Source: Octopus sinensis (taxonomy: Eukaryota). Taken from it: a stretch of 64,000 bases of DNA. Below are positions 1-47,606 of this stretch, piece by piece. Location of the stretch: the NCBI RefSeq assembly GCF_006345805.1, contig NC_043019.1, forward strand, positions 27,775,360-27,839,359, given 5' to 3'. Below the pieces are notes generated by a model, which had not been told where the DNA came from, did no database searches, and worked only from the letters and a program-made list of their open reading frames with translations. The position numbers and the translations under genes are program-made. Each line of letters starts with the position of its first letter. The stretch's first letter is position 1.

Positions 1-101
1 TCTGGGTAACATACCCAGGCATAGTCTTTTTTTTTTTGTATGCTGAGTGCTTTCCATCCAGGTCTTCTCTGAGGTAAGAGAGCCCGGCTGTTTTGAGGCT
101 G

Positions 102-133
<32 letters not shown>

Positions 134-203
134 TGTATGTATGTATGAATGTATGTATGTATATATGTACATATGTACATATATATATGTATATATATAT
201 ATG

Positions 204-279
<76 letters not shown>

Positions 280-545
280 TTATTGTTTCATTTTTCTATT
301 TGTTTCAGTCATTTTGACTACGACCATGCTGGAGCACCACCTTAAAAGGTTTTATTGGAAGAAGTCAATCCCAGGACTTATTCTTTGTAAGCCTAGTAGC
401 TAGTCTATTGGTCTTTTTTGCCAAACTGCTAAGTTAGAGGGCTGTAAACACACCATCATCACTTGTCAAGTGATAGTGGGTGGGTGGGGGGGAGAAACAC
501 AGACACAAAGACACACATATACATATATATACATATATATATATA

Positions 546-843
546 TACTTAATAATTAGGCTTCAGCAAAGATTTGCTTTACCACATACCGAAGTTTAGA
601 AATAGCAGCCAAAAAACCTTAGCTATTTCTTCTACTTTAAAAAGGGACCCCCAGAGATGGATGACCAGATATTGATTGATTTTCGTTGCTTTCCTCTCTG
701 CCTGTGTGAATTGTATTCAAGTATTTTGGTTTCTCTGGGAGTCTCTTTTTAAAGTAGAAGAAATAGCTAAGGTTTTTTGGCTGCTATTTCTAAACTTTGG
801 TATGTGGTAAAGCAAATCTTTGCTGAATCCTAATTATTAAGTA
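546..843. mobile_element. Foldback/MITE-like element with ~110-bp inverted arms
   Basis: tacttaataattagg..tttaaaaagggac at the left is the near-perfect reverse complement of the right arm ending cctaattattaagta. Confidence 0.75.
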
Positions 844-942
844 TTATTTAAGTTTACCGTGAAATGGTCCTTTTTTCATGCCGAATTCTACTTGGTGAAA
901 TTATTGATTACTTCTTAATTAATTAATTTTACCCTTTGTTAT

Positions 943-1013
<71 letters not shown>

Positions 1014-1236
1014 ATTAATATAAACAGCAGGTTGCAATATTTCACCAAAAAGGGGAATTATAATTCTCATTAAATGTGACTAGGGTGTTAAGAAACACCT
1101 ATAGTGCCAATTCAATGACTGAAACAAAGAGAAAAGGTGAAAAAGACACTGCCATGCAATTACTTCAATTCTTAAGTTACCATTTATATACTAAAATAAC
1201 AATTTGAAGTTTGAATCTCTTCAATTCAATACTTAC

Positions 1237-1251
1237 GAGGTTCTGGAGCCG
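1237..1251 (-). CDS. 15-nt micro-exon A (phase 1-1, (P)APEP)
   Basis: ttttcctttttcttatatttttcag|CGGCTCCAGAACCTC|gtaagtatt; paralogous to micro-exon B. Confidence 0.65.
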
Positions 1252-1715
1252 CTGAAAAATATAAGAAAAAGGAAAACTTAATGAAGGTTTAGAATGGCAT
1301 AACAATTAATTTGGTATTTTAATTGAATAACTGATTCTTTACAGAAACACAAACCTTACATTTTCTTATGCAAATGATTTTGTTGAAGTAATATATATAT
1401 ATAACAATACAACAAATTAGACATACTGTGGTAAAAATATGTGTATGTGTGTGTGGGTGTGGGTGTACATACACACACACACACACAAAATGATATGATA
1501 AAATACATACATGCATACATATATAAAATTAATATAAACAGTAGGTTGCAATATTTCACCAAAAAGGATAATTATAATTGTCACTAAATTTGACTAAGGT
1601 GTTAAGAAACAACCACATTGCTAGAAATATCAGCTAAAATGCTCTAATGCTGTAGTTAATGCACATGAATCAAAGCATATACACTAACAGGGACCTGAAG
1701 TGTCCGAAAAATGCT

Positions 1716-1786
1716 GATCAAGAATTCTTAATACTGATGTCAGTTTCGGCAATTTCTGTTGCCTCATCAGTTAAGCTTGCTTGATC
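1716..1786 (-). ncRNA. Canonical type I hammerhead ribozyme
   Basis: Minus strand: GAUCAAG caag CUUAA CUGAUGA GGCAA cagaaa UUGCC GAAA CUG acau CAG UA / UUAAG aauu CUUGAUC. All core nucleotides are present, stems I-III pair fully, the triplet is GUA, and stem I is extended across a 4x4 internal loop. Confidence 0.85.
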
Positions 1787-1815
1787 TCATCTTCTTCAGC
1801 TTGCTTCTCTATTAG

Positions 1816-1821
<6 letters not shown>

Positions 1822-1867
<46 letters not shown>

Positions 1868-2207
1868 TGTGTACAGTGCTCAGGTGCACTACAACTCATC
1901 TAAAGTGTATATATAATCAGGTGTAGTTTCGGCGGATTTCGGAAAGCATGAGGGCCTTAAAGGATGCAGTGTCATGGCAGTCAACAACTGATGCAGGCAG
2001 TTTATTCCATGCTTCAGCAACTCTGAGCGTGAAAAAATGTTTTCGAAAGTCATGGGAGCTGTGTTGTTTTCTGACTTTGTAGGCATATCCACGTGTGTTA
2101 GACACATGGAGATCAAAAAGGTGTTCAGTGTTGTTGTTGGTGAGGTGGTTGATAACTTTGTGGGTGTTTACCAAGTCCGTCGCCAGACGCCGGTATGTTT
2201 CCGCCAC
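1822..2207 (-). mobile_element. CR1-type LINE 3' end
   Basis: NTRGYAYKVRKQHSSHDFRKHFFTLRVAEAWNKLPASVV (CR1 ORF2 C-terminal motif), short 3'UTR, (ATT)n tail. Confidence 0.8.
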
Positions 2208-2475
2208 CCAAATTAATGGATGATTAGCAATTCACTAATGTTTATACATAGAATTAATATAAACAGCAAGTTGCAATATTTCACCAAAAAGGGGAATTAT
2301 AATTCTCACTAAATGTGACTAAGGTGTTAAGAAACACCTATAGTGCCAATTCAATGACTGAAACAAAGAGAAAAGGTGAAAAAGACATTGCCATGCAATT
2401 ACTTCAATTCTTAAGTTACCATTTATATACTAAAATAACAATTTGAAGTTTGAATCTCTTCAATTCAATACTTAC

Positions 2476-2490
2476 GAGTAACTGGGGCCT
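2476..2490 (-). CDS. 15-nt micro-exon B (phase 1-1, (E)APVT)
   Basis: ttttcctttttctcatatgtttcag|AGGCCCCAGTTACTC|gtaagtatt; strong polypyrimidine tract and consensus donor; frame compatible with the exon ending at 30557. Confidence 0.65.
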
Positions 2491-3054
2491 CTGAAACATA
2501 TGAGAAAAAGGAAAACTTAATGAAGGTTTAAAATGGCATAAAAATTAATTTAGTATTTTAATTGATTAATTGATTACTGATTCTTTACATGAACACAAAC
2601 CTTACATTTTTTATGCAAATGATATTGTTGAAGGAATATCGCTCTCTCTCTCTTTCGGAGAGGCACTGAGCAGCTATACGCATACATACACACACGGCAG
2701 TAACTTCCACCTACCGAATTCAATCACAAAGCTCCGGTCGGCTCGGGGCTATAGTGGAAGACACCTACCCAAAGTGCCACGCAGTGAGACTGAACCCGAA
2801 ACAATGTAGCTAGGAAGCAAGCTCCCTAACCACACAGCCATATATATATATAACACTACAACAAATTAGACATACTGTGGTAAAAATGTGTGAATGTGTG
2901 TGTGTGGGTGTGTATACATACACACACACATATTCGCATAATCACCAAACCTGGAGTTTAACTATGGTCTGTCATTAGTAGTTACTTAGCGTTACCTGAC
3001 ACCTTTGGGTCTTATTGACACCATTACCTTTCATAACCTCTCTCTCTCCCTCTC

Positions 3055-3116
<62 letters not shown>

Positions 3117-3449
3117 TCTCTATATATATGTATGTATGTATAAAATGATATGAAATATATACATATATATATACATAGTAGCAGAGATATCCGGCATTGC
3201 TCGGGATTAAAATGGCATAGTTTTTTATTGTTTTACTTGCTTCGGTCATGTGACTGCGGCCATGCTGGAGCACCACCTTTAGTCGAAGAAATTAACAAGA
3301 TTTATTCTTTGAAAGCATAGTACTTATTTTATTGGTGTTTTGCAAAAGGCTAAGTTATGGGGACGTAAACACAGCAACATCGGTAGTCAAGTGATCGTGG
3401 CAGTACAAACACAGACACAGACACACACACTCACACACACATGGATATA

Positions 3450-3486
<37 letters not shown>

Positions 3487-3519
3487 ATATATATATATAA
3501 ATAAATATATATTTATATA

Positions 3520-4170
3520 CTAGCTTAAGGTGACCCGCTCTACGCGCGGGTGAGGGTGTGGTTGTTACTTTCTGTTGCTTCCTTTCTGTTTCTTATCGCC
3601 ACATTCTCCCTCTTTGTTTCTCTATCCTTTCTCATTTTCCAACTCTCTTACTCTTCCTTTCTCTTGGACTTTCCCTCGCTTTCTCTTACTCTTTATCTTT
3701 CTCTATCTATCTCTCTGCCATTTATTAAAAAAATTAGATTTCTGCGTTTAAATTACAAATCCACTTCCACTTTACCAAGTTGAAAATTTGATTGAAATTG
3801 GGCAAAAGGTGTCCGATCTATAGTACACTTATTCCAAGAACACATACTTAAATTTTATGAATCTTCCATGAAAAGTGGATGCATTTGCACTTTCAAAGAG
3901 GCTTTGTCCCGTTATAAACTCCATTAGTAGGTTTAAATAATATTGTTAGATGGTGAAATTTTGGAAATCGTCTTTATTTAGTACCTAGTAGTTATGTTGT
4001 TATTTTCATTGAAATCAGAGGTATCTGAAACTTCATAGGGGGTGTTTGCTCCCCTTTAACCCCCATAACCGTCTTTCTCATAAAATTTAAAATGAAAACA
4101 TATATGTATCTTCTATTCCCTTTCATCCTATAGGTGTACAGAAACAGACGTAGAGCTTTATTATATAAGA
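3520..4170 (-). mobile_element. Complete non-autonomous Helitron (651 bp)
   Basis: Minus strand 5' TCTTATATAATAAAG; 3' hairpin ACCCGC..GCGGGT then CTAG; inserted between A and T. Confidence 0.85.
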
Positions 4171-6009
4171 TTATCAGTCACACATATTTAGTGTATGTGT
4201 TTTGTTTATATGCCAAATTCGCTGCTGGATAGCATCCAGGAAATGCTCTGTACATGAGGCTGAGTGTTAAAGAACACTAAATGTCACAGATTAGGTGAGA
4301 CAACTCAACTCAGATGCCAAGAGTGGTAGATATCTGATATTTCACCATTATTATGGATTATCATGGTATTCTCAAACACTTGAGATCATGTAGCAAGCTG
4401 TACCTGGATGCCATCCGGCAGAAATTTTGGCATATAAACAAAACACATAAACTACATGCAATTAATAATGTTTATATGACTAGAGATGCTTTTAATTCGT
4501 ATTACATATACATGTATACACGTGTGTATGTGTGTGTGGGGGTGTATAATAACACATGTAATAATTTAATTAGACTTCAGTATGATGTATTATGGCCTAA
4601 GTTATGCAGCTAAAAAGACAGTTCATGTAGTTCCAAGAGTTATGTCCTTTGGTTACATATCTATATCCATATTAGATCCATATTAAGTAATCACAGAAAA
4701 ATAATTATTCAAAATTATGTTTCAGTATCTAATATTTATTAATTTCTGTATTCAAGGCATTCACATTTGCTATTTTCTAATTATCTATTTGCTATTATCT
4801 AATTATTTTAAATTGTTTTAATTGTTAATTTTGGATGGAAGGTATCTAATATTATTCTTCTATTGCTCTGTATATCTATCTTTCTTTCCAAAGTCGTTCT
4901 CTATTCCTCTTCTTCTATCTCCACGACTCCTCCTCTTCATATTGTATTCATTGTCTTTTTACACGTTTTTATATTTCAGCCCTGTTTGTTTCCTTTATAT
5001 ATTTGTTTTTTTGTTTTTTCTGTCTCTCCCTTCGTTTTTATCTTAAATCACATATATCTGTGTATACATGTACATTTATATGTGTGTATATATATGTAGG
5101 TGTGTGTGCATGTATATGTATATGCATTTGAGCACACATGCAAACATGTGTGTGTGTGTGTGTGGAGGTGGGTATATATTATTTTATTCTTTTATTTGTT
5201 TCAGTCATTTGACTGCAGCCATGCTGGAGCACTGCCTTTAGTTAAACAAATCAACCCCAGGACTTATTCTTTATAAGCCCAGTACTTATTTATTCGGTGT
5301 CTTTTGCCAAGCTGCTAAGTTATGGGAACATAAACACACCAACATCAGTTGTCAAGTGATGGTGGGGTAAGACAAATATGGACACACAAACATACACATA
5401 CATACACACATACACAAACACACATATATATAAATACGACAGGCTTCTTTCAGTTTCCATCTACCAAATCCATTCACAAGGCTTTGGTTGATCTGAGGCT
5501 ATAGTAGAAGATGCAGTGCCATGCAGTGGGACTGAACCCAAAACCATGCAGTTGGGAAGAAAAGAAAATAAATAAAAGGTTAAATGAGTTTTTTGAGTCA
5601 TCATGAATGTCTGCTCCAAAATGTCTAAAATTGTTAATTTGTTTCTCATAGCTATTTGTCTGCTTTATTGAACATGAATGAGCTGGGAGCTTCTTTAATC
5701 TTAAGGTCTATAACTGTAAATTATAATTCCTCCCCTTCATGTCCTATATGATTCTTGATTGTCAGTTTCATGAAACACCCACTTAGTTCATTTTATAAAT
5801 CAGTACTTTTGATTGTAACTTCACTTGTCTGAGGGCCAATCAATTACTCAACAAGTCATTATTCATTCTGTGTTAGATATTGCCTGATGAGCAAGAGAAT
5901 TGCATGTGTTATGTAATCCCCAAAATTGTATGAGGCTTACATGAAAATAAAGATTTATAGTTAAACTAAATTTAAAATCCATTCATTGTTTGTTTATGTA
6001 TGTATGTAT

Positions 6010-18993: not shown

Positions 18994-21872
18994 ATGAAAT
19001 AGAACATGTATTTAATATCTCTAACTTCACTTCTAGTCTTTGAAATCAGATTAAATTTTAGAATATCCAGTGGTATAGCTGACTTATGAAACAATTATTG
19101 ACTATTTGGATAAGAAGAATTTGCCATTAGTTTGGACTATAAGAAAAAATATAATAGACATTTTCCATAGTACTTAACTGCTTTCATAAAGCATTCTGTT
19201 TTATCTGTACCACACCAATTCAGAGTATGATGTTCACAGGATGAAAAAATAGTGTGATTTATTTTCATTAAGAAATATTCTTTTGTATTCCCTTCTAGCT
19301 GGCTGTCATCTTGGCGCCCTTGCCACATATTTCACCTCTACAATTGTTCTATGGAATGCTATTCCTCCTCATTTCCTCTATCAGGTTTGAAATCTGAAAA
19401 CGTGTTTTCTCATGAGTACCTTCAAAAGAGAGAAATATCTCTTCAATCTTAAATTCACACAATCTATACTTTGAAGGTATCATATGGTAAATGTTGCTTA
19501 TTTCATATGTGCAGAATTAGGTGTTGTATTAACTATTACTATTATTGAATAGTAAATGGTAACAAGCTGGCAGAGTCATCAACATACTAGATAAAATGCT
19601 TAGCAGCATTTCTTCTAGCTTTACATCCTGAGTTCAAATTCTGCCAAGATCAACTTTACCTTTCATCCTTTCAGGGTCAATAAAATAAGACCAGTTAAGT
19701 ACTGGGGATGATGTGATTGATTTACTCTCTCCTCCAAAATGTCAGGCCTTGTGCCTATAGTAGACAGAATTATTGTTGAATAGTATTTTACCGTTGAATT
19801 TTCAGAAACTTTGTTTTAAAACAAGATCATAACAAAGAGAAGTAAAATTATTTTGTGATTTTGTGACTTACAACATTTCTTCTTTTTTTTAAAGTAAAAG
19901 GAAGCTACAGTTGTCAACATTGACAATCATATGAGAACTACCTCAGAATACAAAACTATGTTTATCCAAAAATAAAATGTCAATTAGATGGCATAAAATA
20001 AGATTCTAGATATTTTAGCCTCCTCTGGTTGAGTTCGTTTTTGTAAAAAAAAATATTCCATTCAGGTGTAAGCTGTGTTGTAAGTATAATAGTTTGCTTC
20101 TCAGTCCCATGGTTCTGGGTTCAGTGCCACTGCGTGACATCTTGGACAAATGTCTTCTATTATAACTCCAGTGAGTGGATTTATAACTTGTGAGTGGATT
20201 TGGTAGGCAGAAACTGGAAGAAACATGTGTGTGTATGTGTCTTAATGTCTTTTTGAATTGACTTTGTGTGATAGTTGGGAGTATCACTGTCATGCAAGCA
20301 GTTTATTTCCAGTCTTCCATGAGACCACAACGAAGTATCCTCTTTCTTGGAAACAGTTAAGGGTTGGCAATAAGAAGAGCAACCAGCCATAGAAAGTCTA
20401 TCTCATCAAATTCCATTCAACCCAAGAAAGCATGGAAAAGTGGACATTAAAATGATGATGCATCTGTTTGGATGAATTCATAGTTCAGTTTATGCTAGTT
20501 ACAACATTCATGCTCAGGAATTTTGTTGTATAATTTTTTCCATCTATTTACTGCGGACCTTCTACTCTTTTGTGTCGAAGCTGATGCATCAACTCTGCCT
20601 TTATAAAGAGTCAACACAGTAAACAAAATATGTCTTCTGTCTTAATACTTCATTCCAATCAATCCCTCCTACCATCACCCCAGACAGTCAGCTATTTTAA
20701 TTTCTATCTTTAAAGCTGCCAGCTGGAAAAGATTACTTCTCACTATCACTTGAAAATACTTCAGGCAAGGAAAAATGTTCTTTCAGTATATATTGTCTGC
20801 AATTTTTTCTAAAAAAGAATTAATATCACACCAGTCCAGTGTATTATTGGTATGTCCTTTTTCCTGACTTGGTTTTAAGCTAGTGCTATTCAGGGTGGTT
20901 TATTTGACCATTCCCAATGTTAGGTCAAAGGTATTCTGTGTGGTTTATTTGGCCATTGTAGATGGTTGTTAGATCTGGTATTTTGTGTGGTTTATATCGA
21001 CAGTGTAAATGGTGAGGTCAATTGTACTTGTCACTTGGTTTCTTTGAACTAAGGCCTCTATCCAGTGATGAAGCCTTCTTGTTTATCTCTTGGTTTTTCT
21101 CTCATTCCCTTTCATGACTTCTGCTTATACATTGCACTGATATGATTGAAACATGAAATAAAATTCTTACTTGAAATTCTTACTTGAAACATGAAATGAA
21201 ATTCTTACTGTAAAGGATTGTAATAATAAGGTTATAATTTTGAAACCAGATTTAAATATTTGTTCAACCAAAGGTACATCCTATTGCAAAAAAAATTATT
21301 GTTACTCAGTCCTCTGGAAGTCATAATGTGCAGTTTGCTAATGGGATGTATGTGAATGACAACTGTTGAATGTATAGAGATAAAGAGAAGAGGAGAGGAA
21401 GAGAGACTGAGGGAGAAAAAGAGAGTTTGTGTACATGCGTGTTTTCAATAATTATTTTTTATTTATGCTAAGGCCAGTAATTTTTAGTGAAGAGAATTAG
21501 AAAAATACCTTGTTATTTCAAGCATATAAGTTTTCTCTGTCCCCCATCTACCATAAATATCACCAGTGTCATCACAACTAACATTATTAGTATTATCTTC
21601 AAACCATGACTATAACCATCATTACTGCTGCTGCCCTGCCCCGCCCTTGCCTTTATGCTTCACTGTACCCAATACTAAATTCTACAACTATGTCAACCAG
21701 GAAGAGCAAAGGGATCACGTGGCAATCAACAATCTAACATTACATGAACCCAAATTTGGATAGTGTACATTATAGTGTACATTCCTGACCTAAAAAAAAA
21801 ACATACAAAGGCATGTATATATATGAAATATGAATCAGTTGGTAGTTTTTTGAGATTATAAGAGTTGTGCAA

Positions 21873-30159: not shown

Positions 30160-30556
30160 CATTAAATAATCATCGTATTCCAATTTCCTTTACTTTTCAA
30201 TGATTAGTGGATGAGCAACTGTCTTTTGATACAGACACAACACAGACTACACTTCCAGATTTTTGGGATAAAGTTTTCAGAAATAACCCAATAAGTTTAC
30301 CATTAATTCCATGAAATATTCACGGATCTTGCTAGTTGTTTCTAATTTAGACACAATAATAGCAATTTTTTGTTAGAGTGCTGTTCTAGCTGATTACTTG
30401 CACTCCAGTACCTGAGGTTTGAGGGACAAAAAAACTTCCACCTCAACAGGATCAGAATGTAAAGACTGCCCCAAAAATACAGTAATGCATTTTGTCCAAC
30501 GTCCAAACAAATCTGCCAATTAAAAAAAACCATGTTATGGAAGAAAAGTAACTTAC

Positions 30557-30827
30557 CTTGGCCAGAAAAATAAATGGCCACGACAATTCCAGCAGCAACG
30601 CCTATCACCACAAGTAGAATTCCAAAAATTATTAGAAACTTCTTGCAATTGTGGCCGTTGGAAGAATAATCTGAAGGCATGTCATCCCAGTCATTGTTAC
30701 TCTCTCCAGAAAATAAAGTTTGCTTCTGTGTGTTTGGCCAGGTGCGCTGCAGCCGACTCACCAGTTCTGGCTGATAAGCCAAGTTGTCGTATTGAGGGCC
30801 CCATTCTTTGTCAGCTGCATTTGAATA
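30557..30827 (-). CDS. 271-nt internal exon of a type II single-pass membrane protein (cytoplasmic tail + TM helix), possibly TTSP-like
   Basis: Acceptor tttcttttcctttggcag; donor CAAG|GTAAGT. Open frame YSNAADKEWGPQYDNLAYQPELVSRLQRTWPNTQKQTLFSGESNNDWDDMPSDYSSNGHNCKKFLIIFGILLVVIGVAAGIVVAIYFSGQ(G). KK precedes a 24-aa hydrophobic helix. Phase 0 in, phase 1 out. Confidence 0.82.
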
Positions 30828-46740: not shown

Positions 46741-46768
46741 TTAAGTATAATATCACAGCATAACTTAC

Positions 46769-46777
46769 CTCAGCCAT
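46769..46777 (-). CDS. Candidate first coding exon end (ATG GCT GAG = M-A-E) of the minus-strand membrane protein gene
   Basis: Minus strand ggtATGGCTGAG|GTAAGT: good Kozak context, in-frame TAA 12 nt upstream, consensus donor. Phase 0 matches the acceptor at 30827. A-rich 5'UTR-like sequence extends to about 47200. The linkage to the next exon is inferred. Confidence 0.5.
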
Positions 46778-47606
46778 ACCAATAAGTTACCCGTTTAACA
46801 CTCCACCTCCCTTACTGGCTTGTTTTCCTTAGCTTTAGTTTCTACTTAATGTAGTACTGTAGTTGTTGTTTTTGTTGTTGTCGTAGGTAGTAGTAGAGAC
46901 AGGTACGGTTGTAGTGGTAGTTATAGTTATTGGATCGACAGATCCTGATCCTTAATTTTTGTTTCTTTTTTTTCCTCCTTTATAATGTAATTTTAGTATC
47001 CAGCAGATATTTTATAAATCAAGTCATCTTTCTAGTTTGTATTAAACGTGTGAAATGGTATGAAATTAAATTAAATGATATCGTGTAAAATTACTTAAAC
47101 AGTTGTGCCTTCTTTACTGGCTGGTTTTATGTTCTTTCCCCAGCTTGTGGATTATATTATTGACTCAAACTAGCTCTTCTCCACAATGACAGAGTGAGTG
47201 GGAGAGAGGGAGAGAGGGAGAGAGAGAATGAGAGGGAGAGTCAGAGGCGTTTGTTATGTGTAAATCCTTTGACTGTGACAGATCTAGTTCCTACTGGGTC
47301 GGTTGGTTTACCTGAGATTTTGCTCAGGTAAGCTGACATACAGAGAACAATTAATGAACATGCCAGTGTTCTATACACACAAATATATCAGCATATACTC
47401 TTCTATACACACGAATATATCAGCATACATATACAGACAATAATATATATAAACATATATAGTATACAGAACAATACACATATACACAGTATACAGAACA
47501 ATACACCCATATACATAGAATGATATAAACAGCAATAGACACGCATACAAGCAAACACAAATACATACATACCAACACACACTCACACACAAACACATAC
47601 ATACCA

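What the first reader, a model, noticed from the sequence alone, without database searches (positions are those of the whole stretch)
1237..2490. Tandemly duplicated 15-nt micro-exons that diverged far faster than their flanking introns
Seen: two symmetric phase-1 micro-exons with strong splice signals sit in duplicated ~500-bp units. The exons differ at 5 of 15 nt, of which only one is clearly synonymous. The adjacent ~216 bp of downstream intron differs at only ~4 positions by my count. Spliced after the TM exon they give GQ-EAPVT-PAPEP, a Pro-rich juxtamembrane stalk. Inference: a stalk built and tuned by micro-exon duplication, under diversifying selection or with intron homogenisation by gene conversion; alternative inclusion could set ectodomain spacing or shedding. 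Standard annotation would miss these exons.
Basis: partly seen in the sequence, partly recalled or inferred. Interest (0 to 1): 0.78.

Follow-up and report, generated by a model that had tools for sequence, protein, structure and literature searches.

The report
Duplicated 15-nt octopus stalk micro-exons
Two duplicated 15-base exons in an octopus gene are very probably real and each add five proline-rich amino acids between the membrane anchor and the SEA domain of a surface protein, but one published octopus annotation already contains them and positive selection on them is not shown.

Summary
On the minus strand, 1237-1251 (CGGCTCCAGAACCTC) and 2476-2490 (AGGCCCCAGTTACTC) lie in two ~490-bp paralogous units. 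Each has a ttttcag acceptor and a gtaagt donor. They differ at 5 of 15 nt, against 4 of 226 nt in the downstream intron and 17 of 219 nt upstream.

They are very probably real exons. The deposited Octopus vulgaris protein CAI9739542.1 (225 aa, SEA domain-containing) reads ...IYFSGQ-EAPVT-LAPEP-QVIVESS.... Splicing the orthologous 15-mers in the O. vulgaris locus reproduces it exactly. The gene encodes a type II membrane protein: cytoplasmic head, TM, 10-residue Pro-rich linker, SEA domain, Thr/Pro-rich tail.

So "standard annotation would miss these" is only half right. The O. vulgaris annotation has them. The O. bimaculoides RefSeq models stop in the intron after the TM exon.

The duplication predates the split between O. 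vulgaris and the window's species. No site shows gene conversion since that split.

The exon excess is nominally significant (p 0.0008-0.007). It weakens to 0.02-0.06 if the adjacent AAC/TTA change counts as one event, and to 0.09-0.34 as a scan statistic. Part of the contrast comes from unusually conserved splice flanks (0 fixed differences in 127 nt). Diversifying selection and alternative inclusion remain untested.

This is a new member of a known kind, of modest interest.

The parts
46769..46777 (-). Coding exon 1 (ATGGCTGAG = MAE), followed by gtaagt
   Evidence: Identical to L002 10001-10009, the start of the O. vulgaris CDS
30557..30827 (-). TM exon: YSNAADKEW...NCKK-FLIIFGILLVVIGVAAGIVVAIYF-SGQ plus G. 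Its donor is CAAG|gtaagt, phase 1.
   Evidence: 100% identical in protein to CAI9739542.1 residues 4-93, and 86% to O. bimaculoides LOC106875178.
2476..2490 (-). Micro-exon B, AGGCCCCAGTTACTC, phase 1-1, encodes (E)APVT
   Evidence: Identical to O. vulgaris L002 56481-56495, which is part of the annotated CDS. Acceptor tract 15/18 pyrimidines plus CAG; donor GTAAGT.
1237..1251 (-). Micro-exon A, CGGCTCCAGAACCTC, phase 1-1, encodes (P)APEP. O. vulgaris has TGG..., which gives L instead of P at a CpG.
   Evidence: Ortholog at L002 57747-57761 in the annotated CDS. Acceptor tract 16/18 pyrimidines plus CAG; donor GTAAGT.
1005..1500 (-). Duplication unit A (exon A plus about 250 nt of upstream and 230 nt of downstream intron)
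2244..2930 (-). Duplication unit B (exon B plus flanking intron). It contains a SINE-like insertion at 2640-2839 that unit A lacks.
   Evidence: The insertion is present in both species.
1519..1621 (-). Partial third copy C of the unit (distal downstream-intron part only, no exon), 85-88% identical to A and B
   Evidence: Also present in O. vulgaris.
1821..2243 (-). 5'-truncated LINE fragment (reverse-transcriptase C-terminal ORF plus trinucleotide tail) lying between copy C and unit B. It is not part of the gene product.
   Evidence: ORF 1917-2207 (-) containing the ...FFTLRVAEAWNKLPASVV... motif. Assigning that motif to a LINE reverse transcriptase rests on my own knowledge of such elements; no family search was run. 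(ATA)n at 1821-1867.
19889..19942 (-). Candidate alternative last exon (G)SSHMIVNVDNCSFLLL*, the alternative acceptor for the 30557 donor
   Evidence: Matches the start of the tail of the older O. bimaculoides model XP_014778702.1

Best explanation
The two 15-mers are genuine paralogous micro-exons of a cephalopod gene for a type II single-pass membrane protein. The protein has a cytoplasmic N-terminal head, a TM helix, a Pro-rich linker, an extracellular SEA domain and a Thr/Pro-rich mucin-like tail.

A roughly 0.5-kb exon-plus-intron unit was duplicated inside the large intron between the TM exon and the first SEA exon. That intron runs 28 kb to exon B, 1.2 kb from B to A, and 3.8 kb from A to the SEA exon in O. 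vulgaris. The linker thereby grew from 5 to 10 residues (EAPVT + PAPEP).

Each exon is phase 1-1 and is defined by near-consensus splice sites. Any combination of inclusion keeps the reading frame.

The duplication is older than the split between O. vulgaris and the window's species, a very close relative with about 1% substitutions. No gene conversion has occurred since.

The contrast between exon and intron divergence has two parts. The immediate splice flanks (-40..-1 and +1..+87) are unusually conserved, which I infer reflects constraint for recognising so small an exon. The exon itself encodes an unstructured linker with little sequence constraint and carries a 3-nt block substitution.

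Shown: the anatomy, the paralogy, the orthology, presence in a deposited CDS, and SEA domain membership. Inferred: transcript support for that CDS, constraint on the flanks, and relaxed rather than positive selection on the exons.
For: - P0005 (CAI9739542.1, O. vulgaris) reads ...IYFSGQEAPVTLAPEPQVIVESS....
- Both 15-mers are present at orthologous places in the O. vulgaris locus L002. Splicing e1 + TM + B + A + SEA exon 1 reproduces residues 1-139 of the deposited protein.
- The TM exon and SEA exon 1 are already in frame with each other, so a gene predictor had no need of these exons. The O. vulgaris annotation combined Iso-Seq and RNA-seq PASA assemblies with ab initio predictions (PMC10700109).
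- A stringent splice-signal scan of about 300 kb found only these exons, their O. vulgaris orthologs and the Argonauta hians micro-exon (46764-46793 in L003, DEPPAQTAVI) in the same gene position.
- The SEA domain scores above the Pfam cutoff in all three family members.
- A transcript contig (L004) from another species carries a longer Pro/Thr-rich stalk between the TM and SEA parts.
- In the four-way comparison, 12 upstream, 4(+1) exon and 1 downstream differences are fixed between the paralogs in both species, and 0 sites are concerted.
- The near flanks have 0 fixed differences in 127 nt against 16 in 318 nt distally (P = 0.0014).
Against: - No read-level transcript evidence could be inspected. 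The O. vulgaris model could in principle derive from an ab initio prediction.
- No transcript-derived protein from O. vulgaris or its close relatives containing this region is in the protein collections.
- All current O. bimaculoides RefSeq isoforms end by reading into the intron after the TM exon. An older model splices that donor to a different exon, equivalent to window 19942.
- The Argonauta model has a junction that is not compatible with GT-AG next to its micro-exon.
- The exon excess over distal intron remains nominally significant (p = 0.002, or 0.04 with the block collapsed), so positive selection is not excluded.
Confidence: 0.8

Rival explanations
1. Pseudo-exons. A duplicated piece of intron happens to carry strong AG...GT signals 15 nt apart. 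The O. vulgaris gene model picked them up by prediction, and mature mRNA does not contain them.
For: - Random sequence of this composition gives 0.65 equally strong sites per 64 kb, and 0.17 with a length divisible by 3.
- No transcript-derived protein with these residues is on record.
- The O. bimaculoides models lack them.
Against: - A predictor gains nothing by adding two 15-nt exons between exons that are already in frame.
- The annotation pipeline used long-read transcripts.
- Argonauta has a Pro-rich micro-exon in the same position and phase.
- The splice flanks are more conserved between paralogs than the distal intron.
- About 300 kb of real sequence gave no other hit to the stringent scan.
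Confidence: 0.1
2. Diversifying (positive) selection has driven the two stalk modules apart, tuning linker chemistry or length. Alternative inclusion gives up to four stalk isoforms.
For: - The exon differs at 5/15 against 19/318 in distal intron (p = 0.002) and 0/127 fixed differences in the near flanks.
- Four of the five changes are nonsynonymous.
- One further nonsynonymous difference (P/L) separates the two species in exon A.
- All skipping combinations keep the frame.
- Stalk length varies across the family.
Against: - Three of the five changes are one contiguous AAC/TTA block, plausibly a single mutational event. Collapsing it gives p = 0.02-0.06, and the scan statistic gives 0.09-0.34.
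- A 4:1 ratio of nonsynonymous to synonymous changes is what neutrality predicts.
- The P/L difference lies at a CpG.
- Exon B is identical in the two species.
- Only one isoform is on record.
Confidence: 0.15
3. The exons show the true age of the duplication, and the flanking introns look young because gene conversion homogenised them.
For: - The downstream flank is much less diverged than the upstream flank (4/226 against 17/219, p = 0.003).
- Partial copy C is 12-15% diverged from A and B, which shows an older round of duplication.
Against: - Since the split from O. vulgaris there is no concerted site at all.
- Conversion would need two tracts that stop exactly at the exon edges (-40..-1 and +1..+87 identical, exon different).
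- O. vulgaris has lost the distal 130 nt of unit A's downstream flank, so that part is neither maintained nor converted.
Confidence: 0.15

Closest known systems
Schistosoma micro-exon genes (MEGs)
   Same: Both have very small symmetric exons whose lengths are multiples of 3, separated by long introns. In both, any exon can be skipped without a frameshift, and the proteins are exposed and fast-evolving (PMC4350168; PMC10526429).
   Different: In MEGs most of the coding region consists of micro-exons and the products are secreted. Here only 2 exons (30 nt of at least 675 nt of CDS) are micro-exons and the protein is membrane-anchored. Alternative splicing is documented for MEGs and not here.
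SEA-domain type II membrane proteins (enteropeptidase and other type II transmembrane serine proteases; membrane-tethered mucins)
   Same: Both have an N-terminal cytoplasmic tail, a single TM helix and a short stalk followed directly by a SEA domain and mucin-like sequence. An Argonauta relative continues with LDLa and MAM domains, as in the enteropeptidase stem. That comparison with enteropeptidase is from my own knowledge of its architecture.
   Different: No protease domain was found. The O. vulgaris model lacks the G|S autoproteolysis motif (DVPIIK where relatives have GSII). Outside the SEA domain there is no sequence relationship, and the family was found only in cephalopods.
Linkers built from tandemly duplicated small exons (for example titin PEVK exons or collagen 45/54-nt exons; from my own knowledge, not tested here)
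   Same: Pro-rich, low-complexity spacer segments lengthened by duplicating an exon together with its flanking intron.
   Different: Those exons are larger (45-84 nt or more) and form long arrays. Here there are two 15-nt exons plus a remnant of a third unit.

Membership tests
Protein-coding micro-exon (30 nt or less) | Length of 30 nt or less, here a multiple of 3 with the same phase at both ends | tested here: met
   Both are 15 nt and phase 1-1. They are open in frame with the TM exon (phase-1 donor) and with O. vulgaris SEA exon 1 (phase-1 acceptor).
Protein-coding micro-exon (30 nt or less) | Canonical, strong splice sites | tested here: met
   CAG acceptor with 15-16/18 pyrimidines and a GTAAGT donor. 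These were the only such sites in the window. Chance expectation is 0.17 per 64 kb for lengths divisible by 3.
Protein-coding micro-exon (30 nt or less) | Present in a deposited coding sequence | tested here: met
   CAI9739542.1 residues 94-103 are EAPVTLAPEP, reproduced by splicing L002 56481-56495 and 57747-57761.
Protein-coding micro-exon (30 nt or less) | Junction-spanning transcript reads | not testable with these tools
   No read data are accessible. The annotation pipeline used Iso-Seq and RNA-seq, but the evidence for each gene is not visible.
Schistosoma-type micro-exon gene (MEG) | Most of the CDS is made of micro-exons | tested here: not met
   Two micro-exons (30 nt) sit among larger exons of 271 and 108 nt and others.
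Schistosoma-type micro-exon gene (MEG) | Secreted product with a signal peptide | tested here: not met
   There is no N-terminal signal sequence. A single internal hydrophobic helix is preceded by KK, indicating a type II anchor (topology inferred).
Schistosoma-type micro-exon gene (MEG) | Protein variation by differential micro-exon splicing | not testable with these tools
   Only one isoform is on record. All four combinations would stay in frame.
SEA-domain membrane protein | SEA domain above the Pfam gathering score | tested here: met
   PF01390 scores 28.5, 49.1 and 58.8 bits against a cutoff of 26.4 for P0005, P0006 and P0007.
SEA-domain membrane protein | G|SVVV-type autoproteolysis motif | tested here: inconclusive
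   GSIIIKF is present in Argonauta and GSIIADF in P0007. The O. vulgaris model has DVPIIKI at that place, and that exon lies outside the window.
Concerted evolution of tandem duplicates (gene conversion) | Paralogs within a species share states that differ between species | tested here: not met
   No such sites were found in 229 + 15 + 97 aligned columns. All A/B differences are fixed in both species.
Positive selection on duplicated exons | Exon divergence significantly above the neutral flank rate, robust to multi-nucleotide events and window choice | tested here: inconclusive
   p = 8e-4 to 7e-3 when sites are treated as independent and the window as pre-specified. p = 0.02-0.06 with AAC/TTA collapsed. 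The scan statistic gives 0.09-0.34.

The most novel reading that the evidence does not exclude
The pair is a small MEG-like variation module in a cephalopod. On this reading, two symmetric micro-exons are kept distinct by diversifying selection and included combinatorially, giving stalks of 0, 5 or 10 extra residues. These would set the distance of the SEA domain from the membrane or its susceptibility to shedding. The conserved intronic flanks would act as the regulatory handles.
Probability: 0.1. Interest if true: 0.55.

Novelty: new member of a known kind. Interest (0 to 1): 0.33.

Why it matters
The locus is a clean, datable example of a protein linker lengthened by duplicating a 15-nt exon together with its splice flanks.

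It also shows how annotation pipelines differ. A long-read-supported annotation (O. vulgaris) captured the micro-exons and the SEA ectodomain. The RefSeq models of O. bimaculoides truncate the same gene after its TM exon, and no protein from the window's own species is on record.

For cephalopod genomics it flags a lineage-restricted gene for a type II SEA/mucin-like membrane protein. Its true extent is probably under-annotated, because an Argonauta relative continues into LDLa and MAM domains.

It does not, on present evidence, reveal a new mechanism.

Tried and rejected
- **Dispersed-repeat explanation.** blastn of unit A against the whole window, 94 kb of O. vulgaris, 61 kb of non-N O. bimaculoides sequence and 61 kb of Argonauta found only copies A, B and partial C. 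The unit is therefore not a transposable element family.
- **Hidden RNA gene in the conserved downstream intron.** An Rfam scan of 1-4000 gave only sub-threshold microsatellite-type miRNA matches.
- **Conserved 43-aa ORF on the + strand (1076-1207 / 2315-2446).** Rejected, because O. vulgaris has lost part of that stretch in unit A.
- **O. bimaculoides orthologous micro-exon region.** L001 ends at the equivalent of window ~11634, about 9 kb short. No O. bimaculoides protein covers the SEA part that could anchor a further fetch.
- **More family members or isoforms.** Three word-indexed searches and one exhaustive HMMER search gave only five distinct proteins, and no O. sinensis or other Octopus isoform.
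- **Read-through after the TM exon as the real C-terminus (RefSeq X1-X3).** Rejected, because the frame is not kept between species.
- **More units to the left of the window.** There are none in the 26 kb of O. vulgaris sequence downstream of exon A.

Full report
**What is in the sequence**

The gene lies on the minus strand. The "30557 exon" is 30827-30557. It encodes YSNAADKEW...NCKK-FLIIFGILLVVIGVAAGIVVAIYF-SGQ and ends CAAG|gtaagt with one base of the next codon, so it is phase 1.

Reading the minus strand at the reported coordinates gives two candidate exons:
- ...ccttttttcttatatttttcag|CGGCTCCAGAACCTC|gtaagtat at 1251-1237 (exon A).
- ...cctttttctcatatgtttcag|AGGCCCCAGTTACTC|gtaagtat at 2490-2476 (exon B).

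They sit in paralogous units. Unit A is about 1005-1500. Unit B is about 2244-2930 and carries a ~200-bp SINE-like insertion at 2640-2839. A third, partial copy C at 1519-1621 is 85-88% identical to A and B. The 300-nt core of A and B is 96% identical, with a spacing of 1239 bp. Between copy C and unit B lies a 5'-truncated LINE fragment, so the duplication is tandem but interrupted.

**The counts**

In gene orientation, A and B differ as follows:

| Segment | Differences / aligned nt |
|---|---|
| Exon | 5 / 15 |
| Near upstream intron | 10 / 142 |
| Far upstream intron | 7 / 77 |
| Downstream intron | 4 / 226 |

Only GCT/GCC is synonymous. The spliced product in the window is MAE-...-SGQ-EAPVT-PAPEP with a C left over.

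**Are they exons?**

A word-indexed protein search with the TM exon found only O. bimaculoides LOC106875178. Its current RefSeq isoforms X1-X3 all terminate by reading into the intron after the TM exon. An older model splices that donor to a different exon, which corresponds to window 19942-19889 (GSSHMIVNVDNCSFLLL*). The read-through frame is not kept in the window, so those models look truncated.

The exhaustive HMMER search then returned three further proteins:
- P0005, 225 aa, 100% identical over the TM exon. This is CAI9739542.1, "hypothetical predicted protein [Octopus vulgaris]", named SEA domain-containing protein in UniProt.
- P0006, from Argonauta hians.
- P0007, from a 1049-nt contig in the Logan set of assembled public sequencing runs, with an uninterrupted ORF. 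I take it to be a transcript.

P0005 reads ...IYFSGQ-EAPVT-LAPEP-QVIVESSVKLNDTYVPAL....

I fetched the O. vulgaris locus (L002, OX597836.1). The window is reverse-collinear with it at about 96.6% identity, made up of about 1% substitutions plus indels. It is therefore a very close relative and not the same assembly. That it is O. sinensis is my guess and was not tested.

Both 15-mers are present in L002 at the collinear places. B is identical to the window. A begins TGG instead of CGG, a CpG transition that turns the junction codon CCG (P) into CTG (L). Splicing L002 10001-10009, 26894-27164, 56481-56495, 57747-57761 and 61562-61669 reproduces residues 1-139 of the deposited protein exactly.

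The TM exon donor and the SEA exon acceptor are both phase 1, so they are already in frame with each other. A gene predictor therefore had no reason to add two 15-nt exons. The annotation used Iso-Seq and RNA-seq PASA assemblies merged with Augustus and GeneMark by EVM (PMC10700109). I infer transcript support but could not see the reads.

**Independent support from splice signals**

I scanned for a CAG or TAG acceptor with at least 14/18 pyrimidines, a GTAAGT donor and an exon of 3-60 nt. Across the window, L001, L002 and L003 (about 300 kb, both strands), the scan hit only five sites: the two window exons, their two O. vulgaris orthologs, and one 30-nt phase-1 exon in Argonauta hians. The Argonauta exon (L003 46764-46793, DEPPAQTAVI) occupies the same position between the TM exon and the SEA exon.

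Composition-matched random sequence gives 0.65 such sites per 64 kb, or 0.17 for lengths divisible by 3. The signals alone would be weak evidence, but together with the CDS they are convincing.

One caveat applies. The Argonauta model's next junction is not GT-AG compatible.

**What the gene is**

All three family members have a SEA domain above the Pfam cutoff. The N-terminal part has no signal peptide. KK precedes the hydrophobic helix, and the C-terminal part carries N-glycosylation sequons and a Thr/Pro-rich tail. I read this as a type II orientation, which is an inference.

A second Argonauta protein (P0009, 858 aa) has the same start. It continues through PSGPQT(K/T) mucin repeats into LDLa and MAM domains. 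The 225-aa O. vulgaris model may therefore be incomplete.

The linker between the TM exon and the SEA domain varies in length. It is about 8-10 residues in Argonauta, 10 in Octopus and about 30 in P0007. "Pro-rich juxtamembrane stalk" is thus correct. "Shedding" is plausible by analogy with other SEA proteins, but the O. vulgaris model lacks the G|S motif that its relatives have.

**History of the duplication**

O. vulgaris has the same B, C, A arrangement and no further copy in 94 kb, including 26 kb beyond the left edge of the window.

In a four-way alignment (A and B in each of two species), every A/B difference that can be scored is fixed in both species. That covers 12 upstream, 4 exon and 1 downstream site, plus the three-state first exon position. 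No site has the concerted pattern in which paralogs are alike within a species and differ between species. The duplication therefore predates the species split, and nothing has been homogenised since.

O. vulgaris also lacks window 845-1139, the distal 130 nt of unit A's downstream flank, and has an inverted SINE copy there. That part is therefore not needed.

**Is the exon divergence exceptional?**

| Comparison | p-value |
|---|---|
| Exon vs all flanks (15-mer pre-specified, sites independent) | 8e-4 |
| Exon vs upstream intron only | 7e-3 |
| Exon vs distal intron | 2e-3 |
| AAC/TTA counted as one event | 0.02-0.06 |
| Scan statistic, any 15-nt window | 0.09 (uniform rate), 0.34 (two-rate) |

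Three of the five differences are the contiguous block AAC/TTA, which spans two codons and is plausibly a single event.

The flanks themselves are heterogeneous. Upstream is 7.8% diverged against 1.8% downstream (p = 0.003). The immediate splice flanks (-40..-1 and +1..+87) carry no paralog-fixed difference in 127 nt, against 16 in 318 nt of distal intron (P = 0.0014).

Much of the striking contrast therefore comes from conserved splice flanks. This is what is expected around a micro-exon that depends on strong intronic signals (general knowledge of micro-exon biology, not tested here). A 4:1 ratio of replacement to silent changes is the neutral expectation. For scale, the TM exon has dN/dS = 0.36 against O. 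bimaculoides.

My reading is that the flanks are constrained and the linker exon is unconstrained and took a block mutation. Positive selection is neither needed nor excluded.

**Comparison with known systems**

The nearest analogue in logic is the schistosome micro-exon gene family: symmetric tiny exons, long introns, frame-neutral skipping and fast evolution (PMC4350168). This gene fails the defining MEG features, because micro-exons are a small minority of its CDS and the product is membrane-anchored rather than secreted.

In protein architecture it belongs with SEA-domain type II membrane proteins.

A literature search for micro-exon duplication in cephalopods found nothing. The exons themselves, however, are already in a public gene model.

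**Verdict**

The exons are very probably real and form a duplicated Pro-rich stalk. The claims of diversifying selection, gene conversion and alternative inclusion are unsupported or untested. The claim that annotation would miss them is true for one pipeline and false for another. This is a new member of a known kind, of modest interest.

Noticed in passing
window 19889-19942 (-): ag|GTAGTTCTCATATG... would add GSSHMIVNVDNCSFLLL* after the TM exon. It matches the start of the tail of the older O. bimaculoides model XP_014778702.1. It may be an alternative last exon giving a short, ectodomain-less isoform.
   Followed up: partly
L001 (O. bimaculoides CM046623.1) 69338-69718; window 30455-30556: All three current RefSeq isoforms of LOC106875178 end by reading into the intron after the TM exon. 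That frame is not conserved in the window. The SEA part of the gene is not annotated in O. bimaculoides.
   Followed up: partly
window 1821-2243 (-): 5'-truncated LINE fragment. The ORF at 1917-2207 ends ...FFTLRVAEAWNKLPASVVDCHDTASFKALM..., followed by an (ATA)n tail at 1821-1867. It lies between partial unit C and unit B. The LINE assignment rests on my own knowledge of that motif; no family search was run.
   Followed up: no
window 560-840: Near-perfect palindrome of about 280 bp (MITE-like), also present in O. vulgaris.
   Followed up: no
window 275-520, 3217-3440, 5176-5562, 2640-2839 and elsewhere: An abundant SINE-like dispersed repeat (core ...GTCATTTGACTGCGGCCATGCTGGAGCACC...). One fragment is inserted in unit B in both species, so it arrived after the A/B duplication and before the species split.
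   Followed up: partly
window 845-1139 versus L002 57855-58123: Structural difference between the two species just downstream of exon A. O. vulgaris lacks about 295 bp, including the distal part of unit A, and has an inverted copy of the SINE there.
   Followed up: partly
L003 (Argonauta hians) 46764-46793 and 47603: Argonauta has a single 30-nt phase-1 micro-exon (DEPPAQTAVI). The deposited protein requires a non-GT-AG junction to the SEA exon, which points to a model or assembly error, or to use of a GTAATT donor.
   Followed up: partly
P0009 (A. hians, 858 aa); L003 59217-59396; L002 85416-85505: An Argonauta relative continues from the SEA domain through PSGPQT(K/T) repeats into LDLa and MAM domains. 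O. vulgaris has an extra SEA-like exon hit beyond the annotated stop. The octopus gene may be longer than its 225-aa model, or a tandem paralog may follow it.
   Followed up: partly
window 2479-2481 versus 2424-2430 (unit B): The block change AAC->TTA creates AGTTAC in exon B, the reverse complement of GTAACT about 55 nt downstream in the same unit. Template switching may be the source, but a 6-nt match is weak evidence.
   Followed up: no
window 2497 and 2502: Two substitutions specific to the window's lineage in the pyrimidine tract of exon B's acceptor (T->G at -7, T->C at -12). O. vulgaris B keeps the same tract as A.
   Followed up: no
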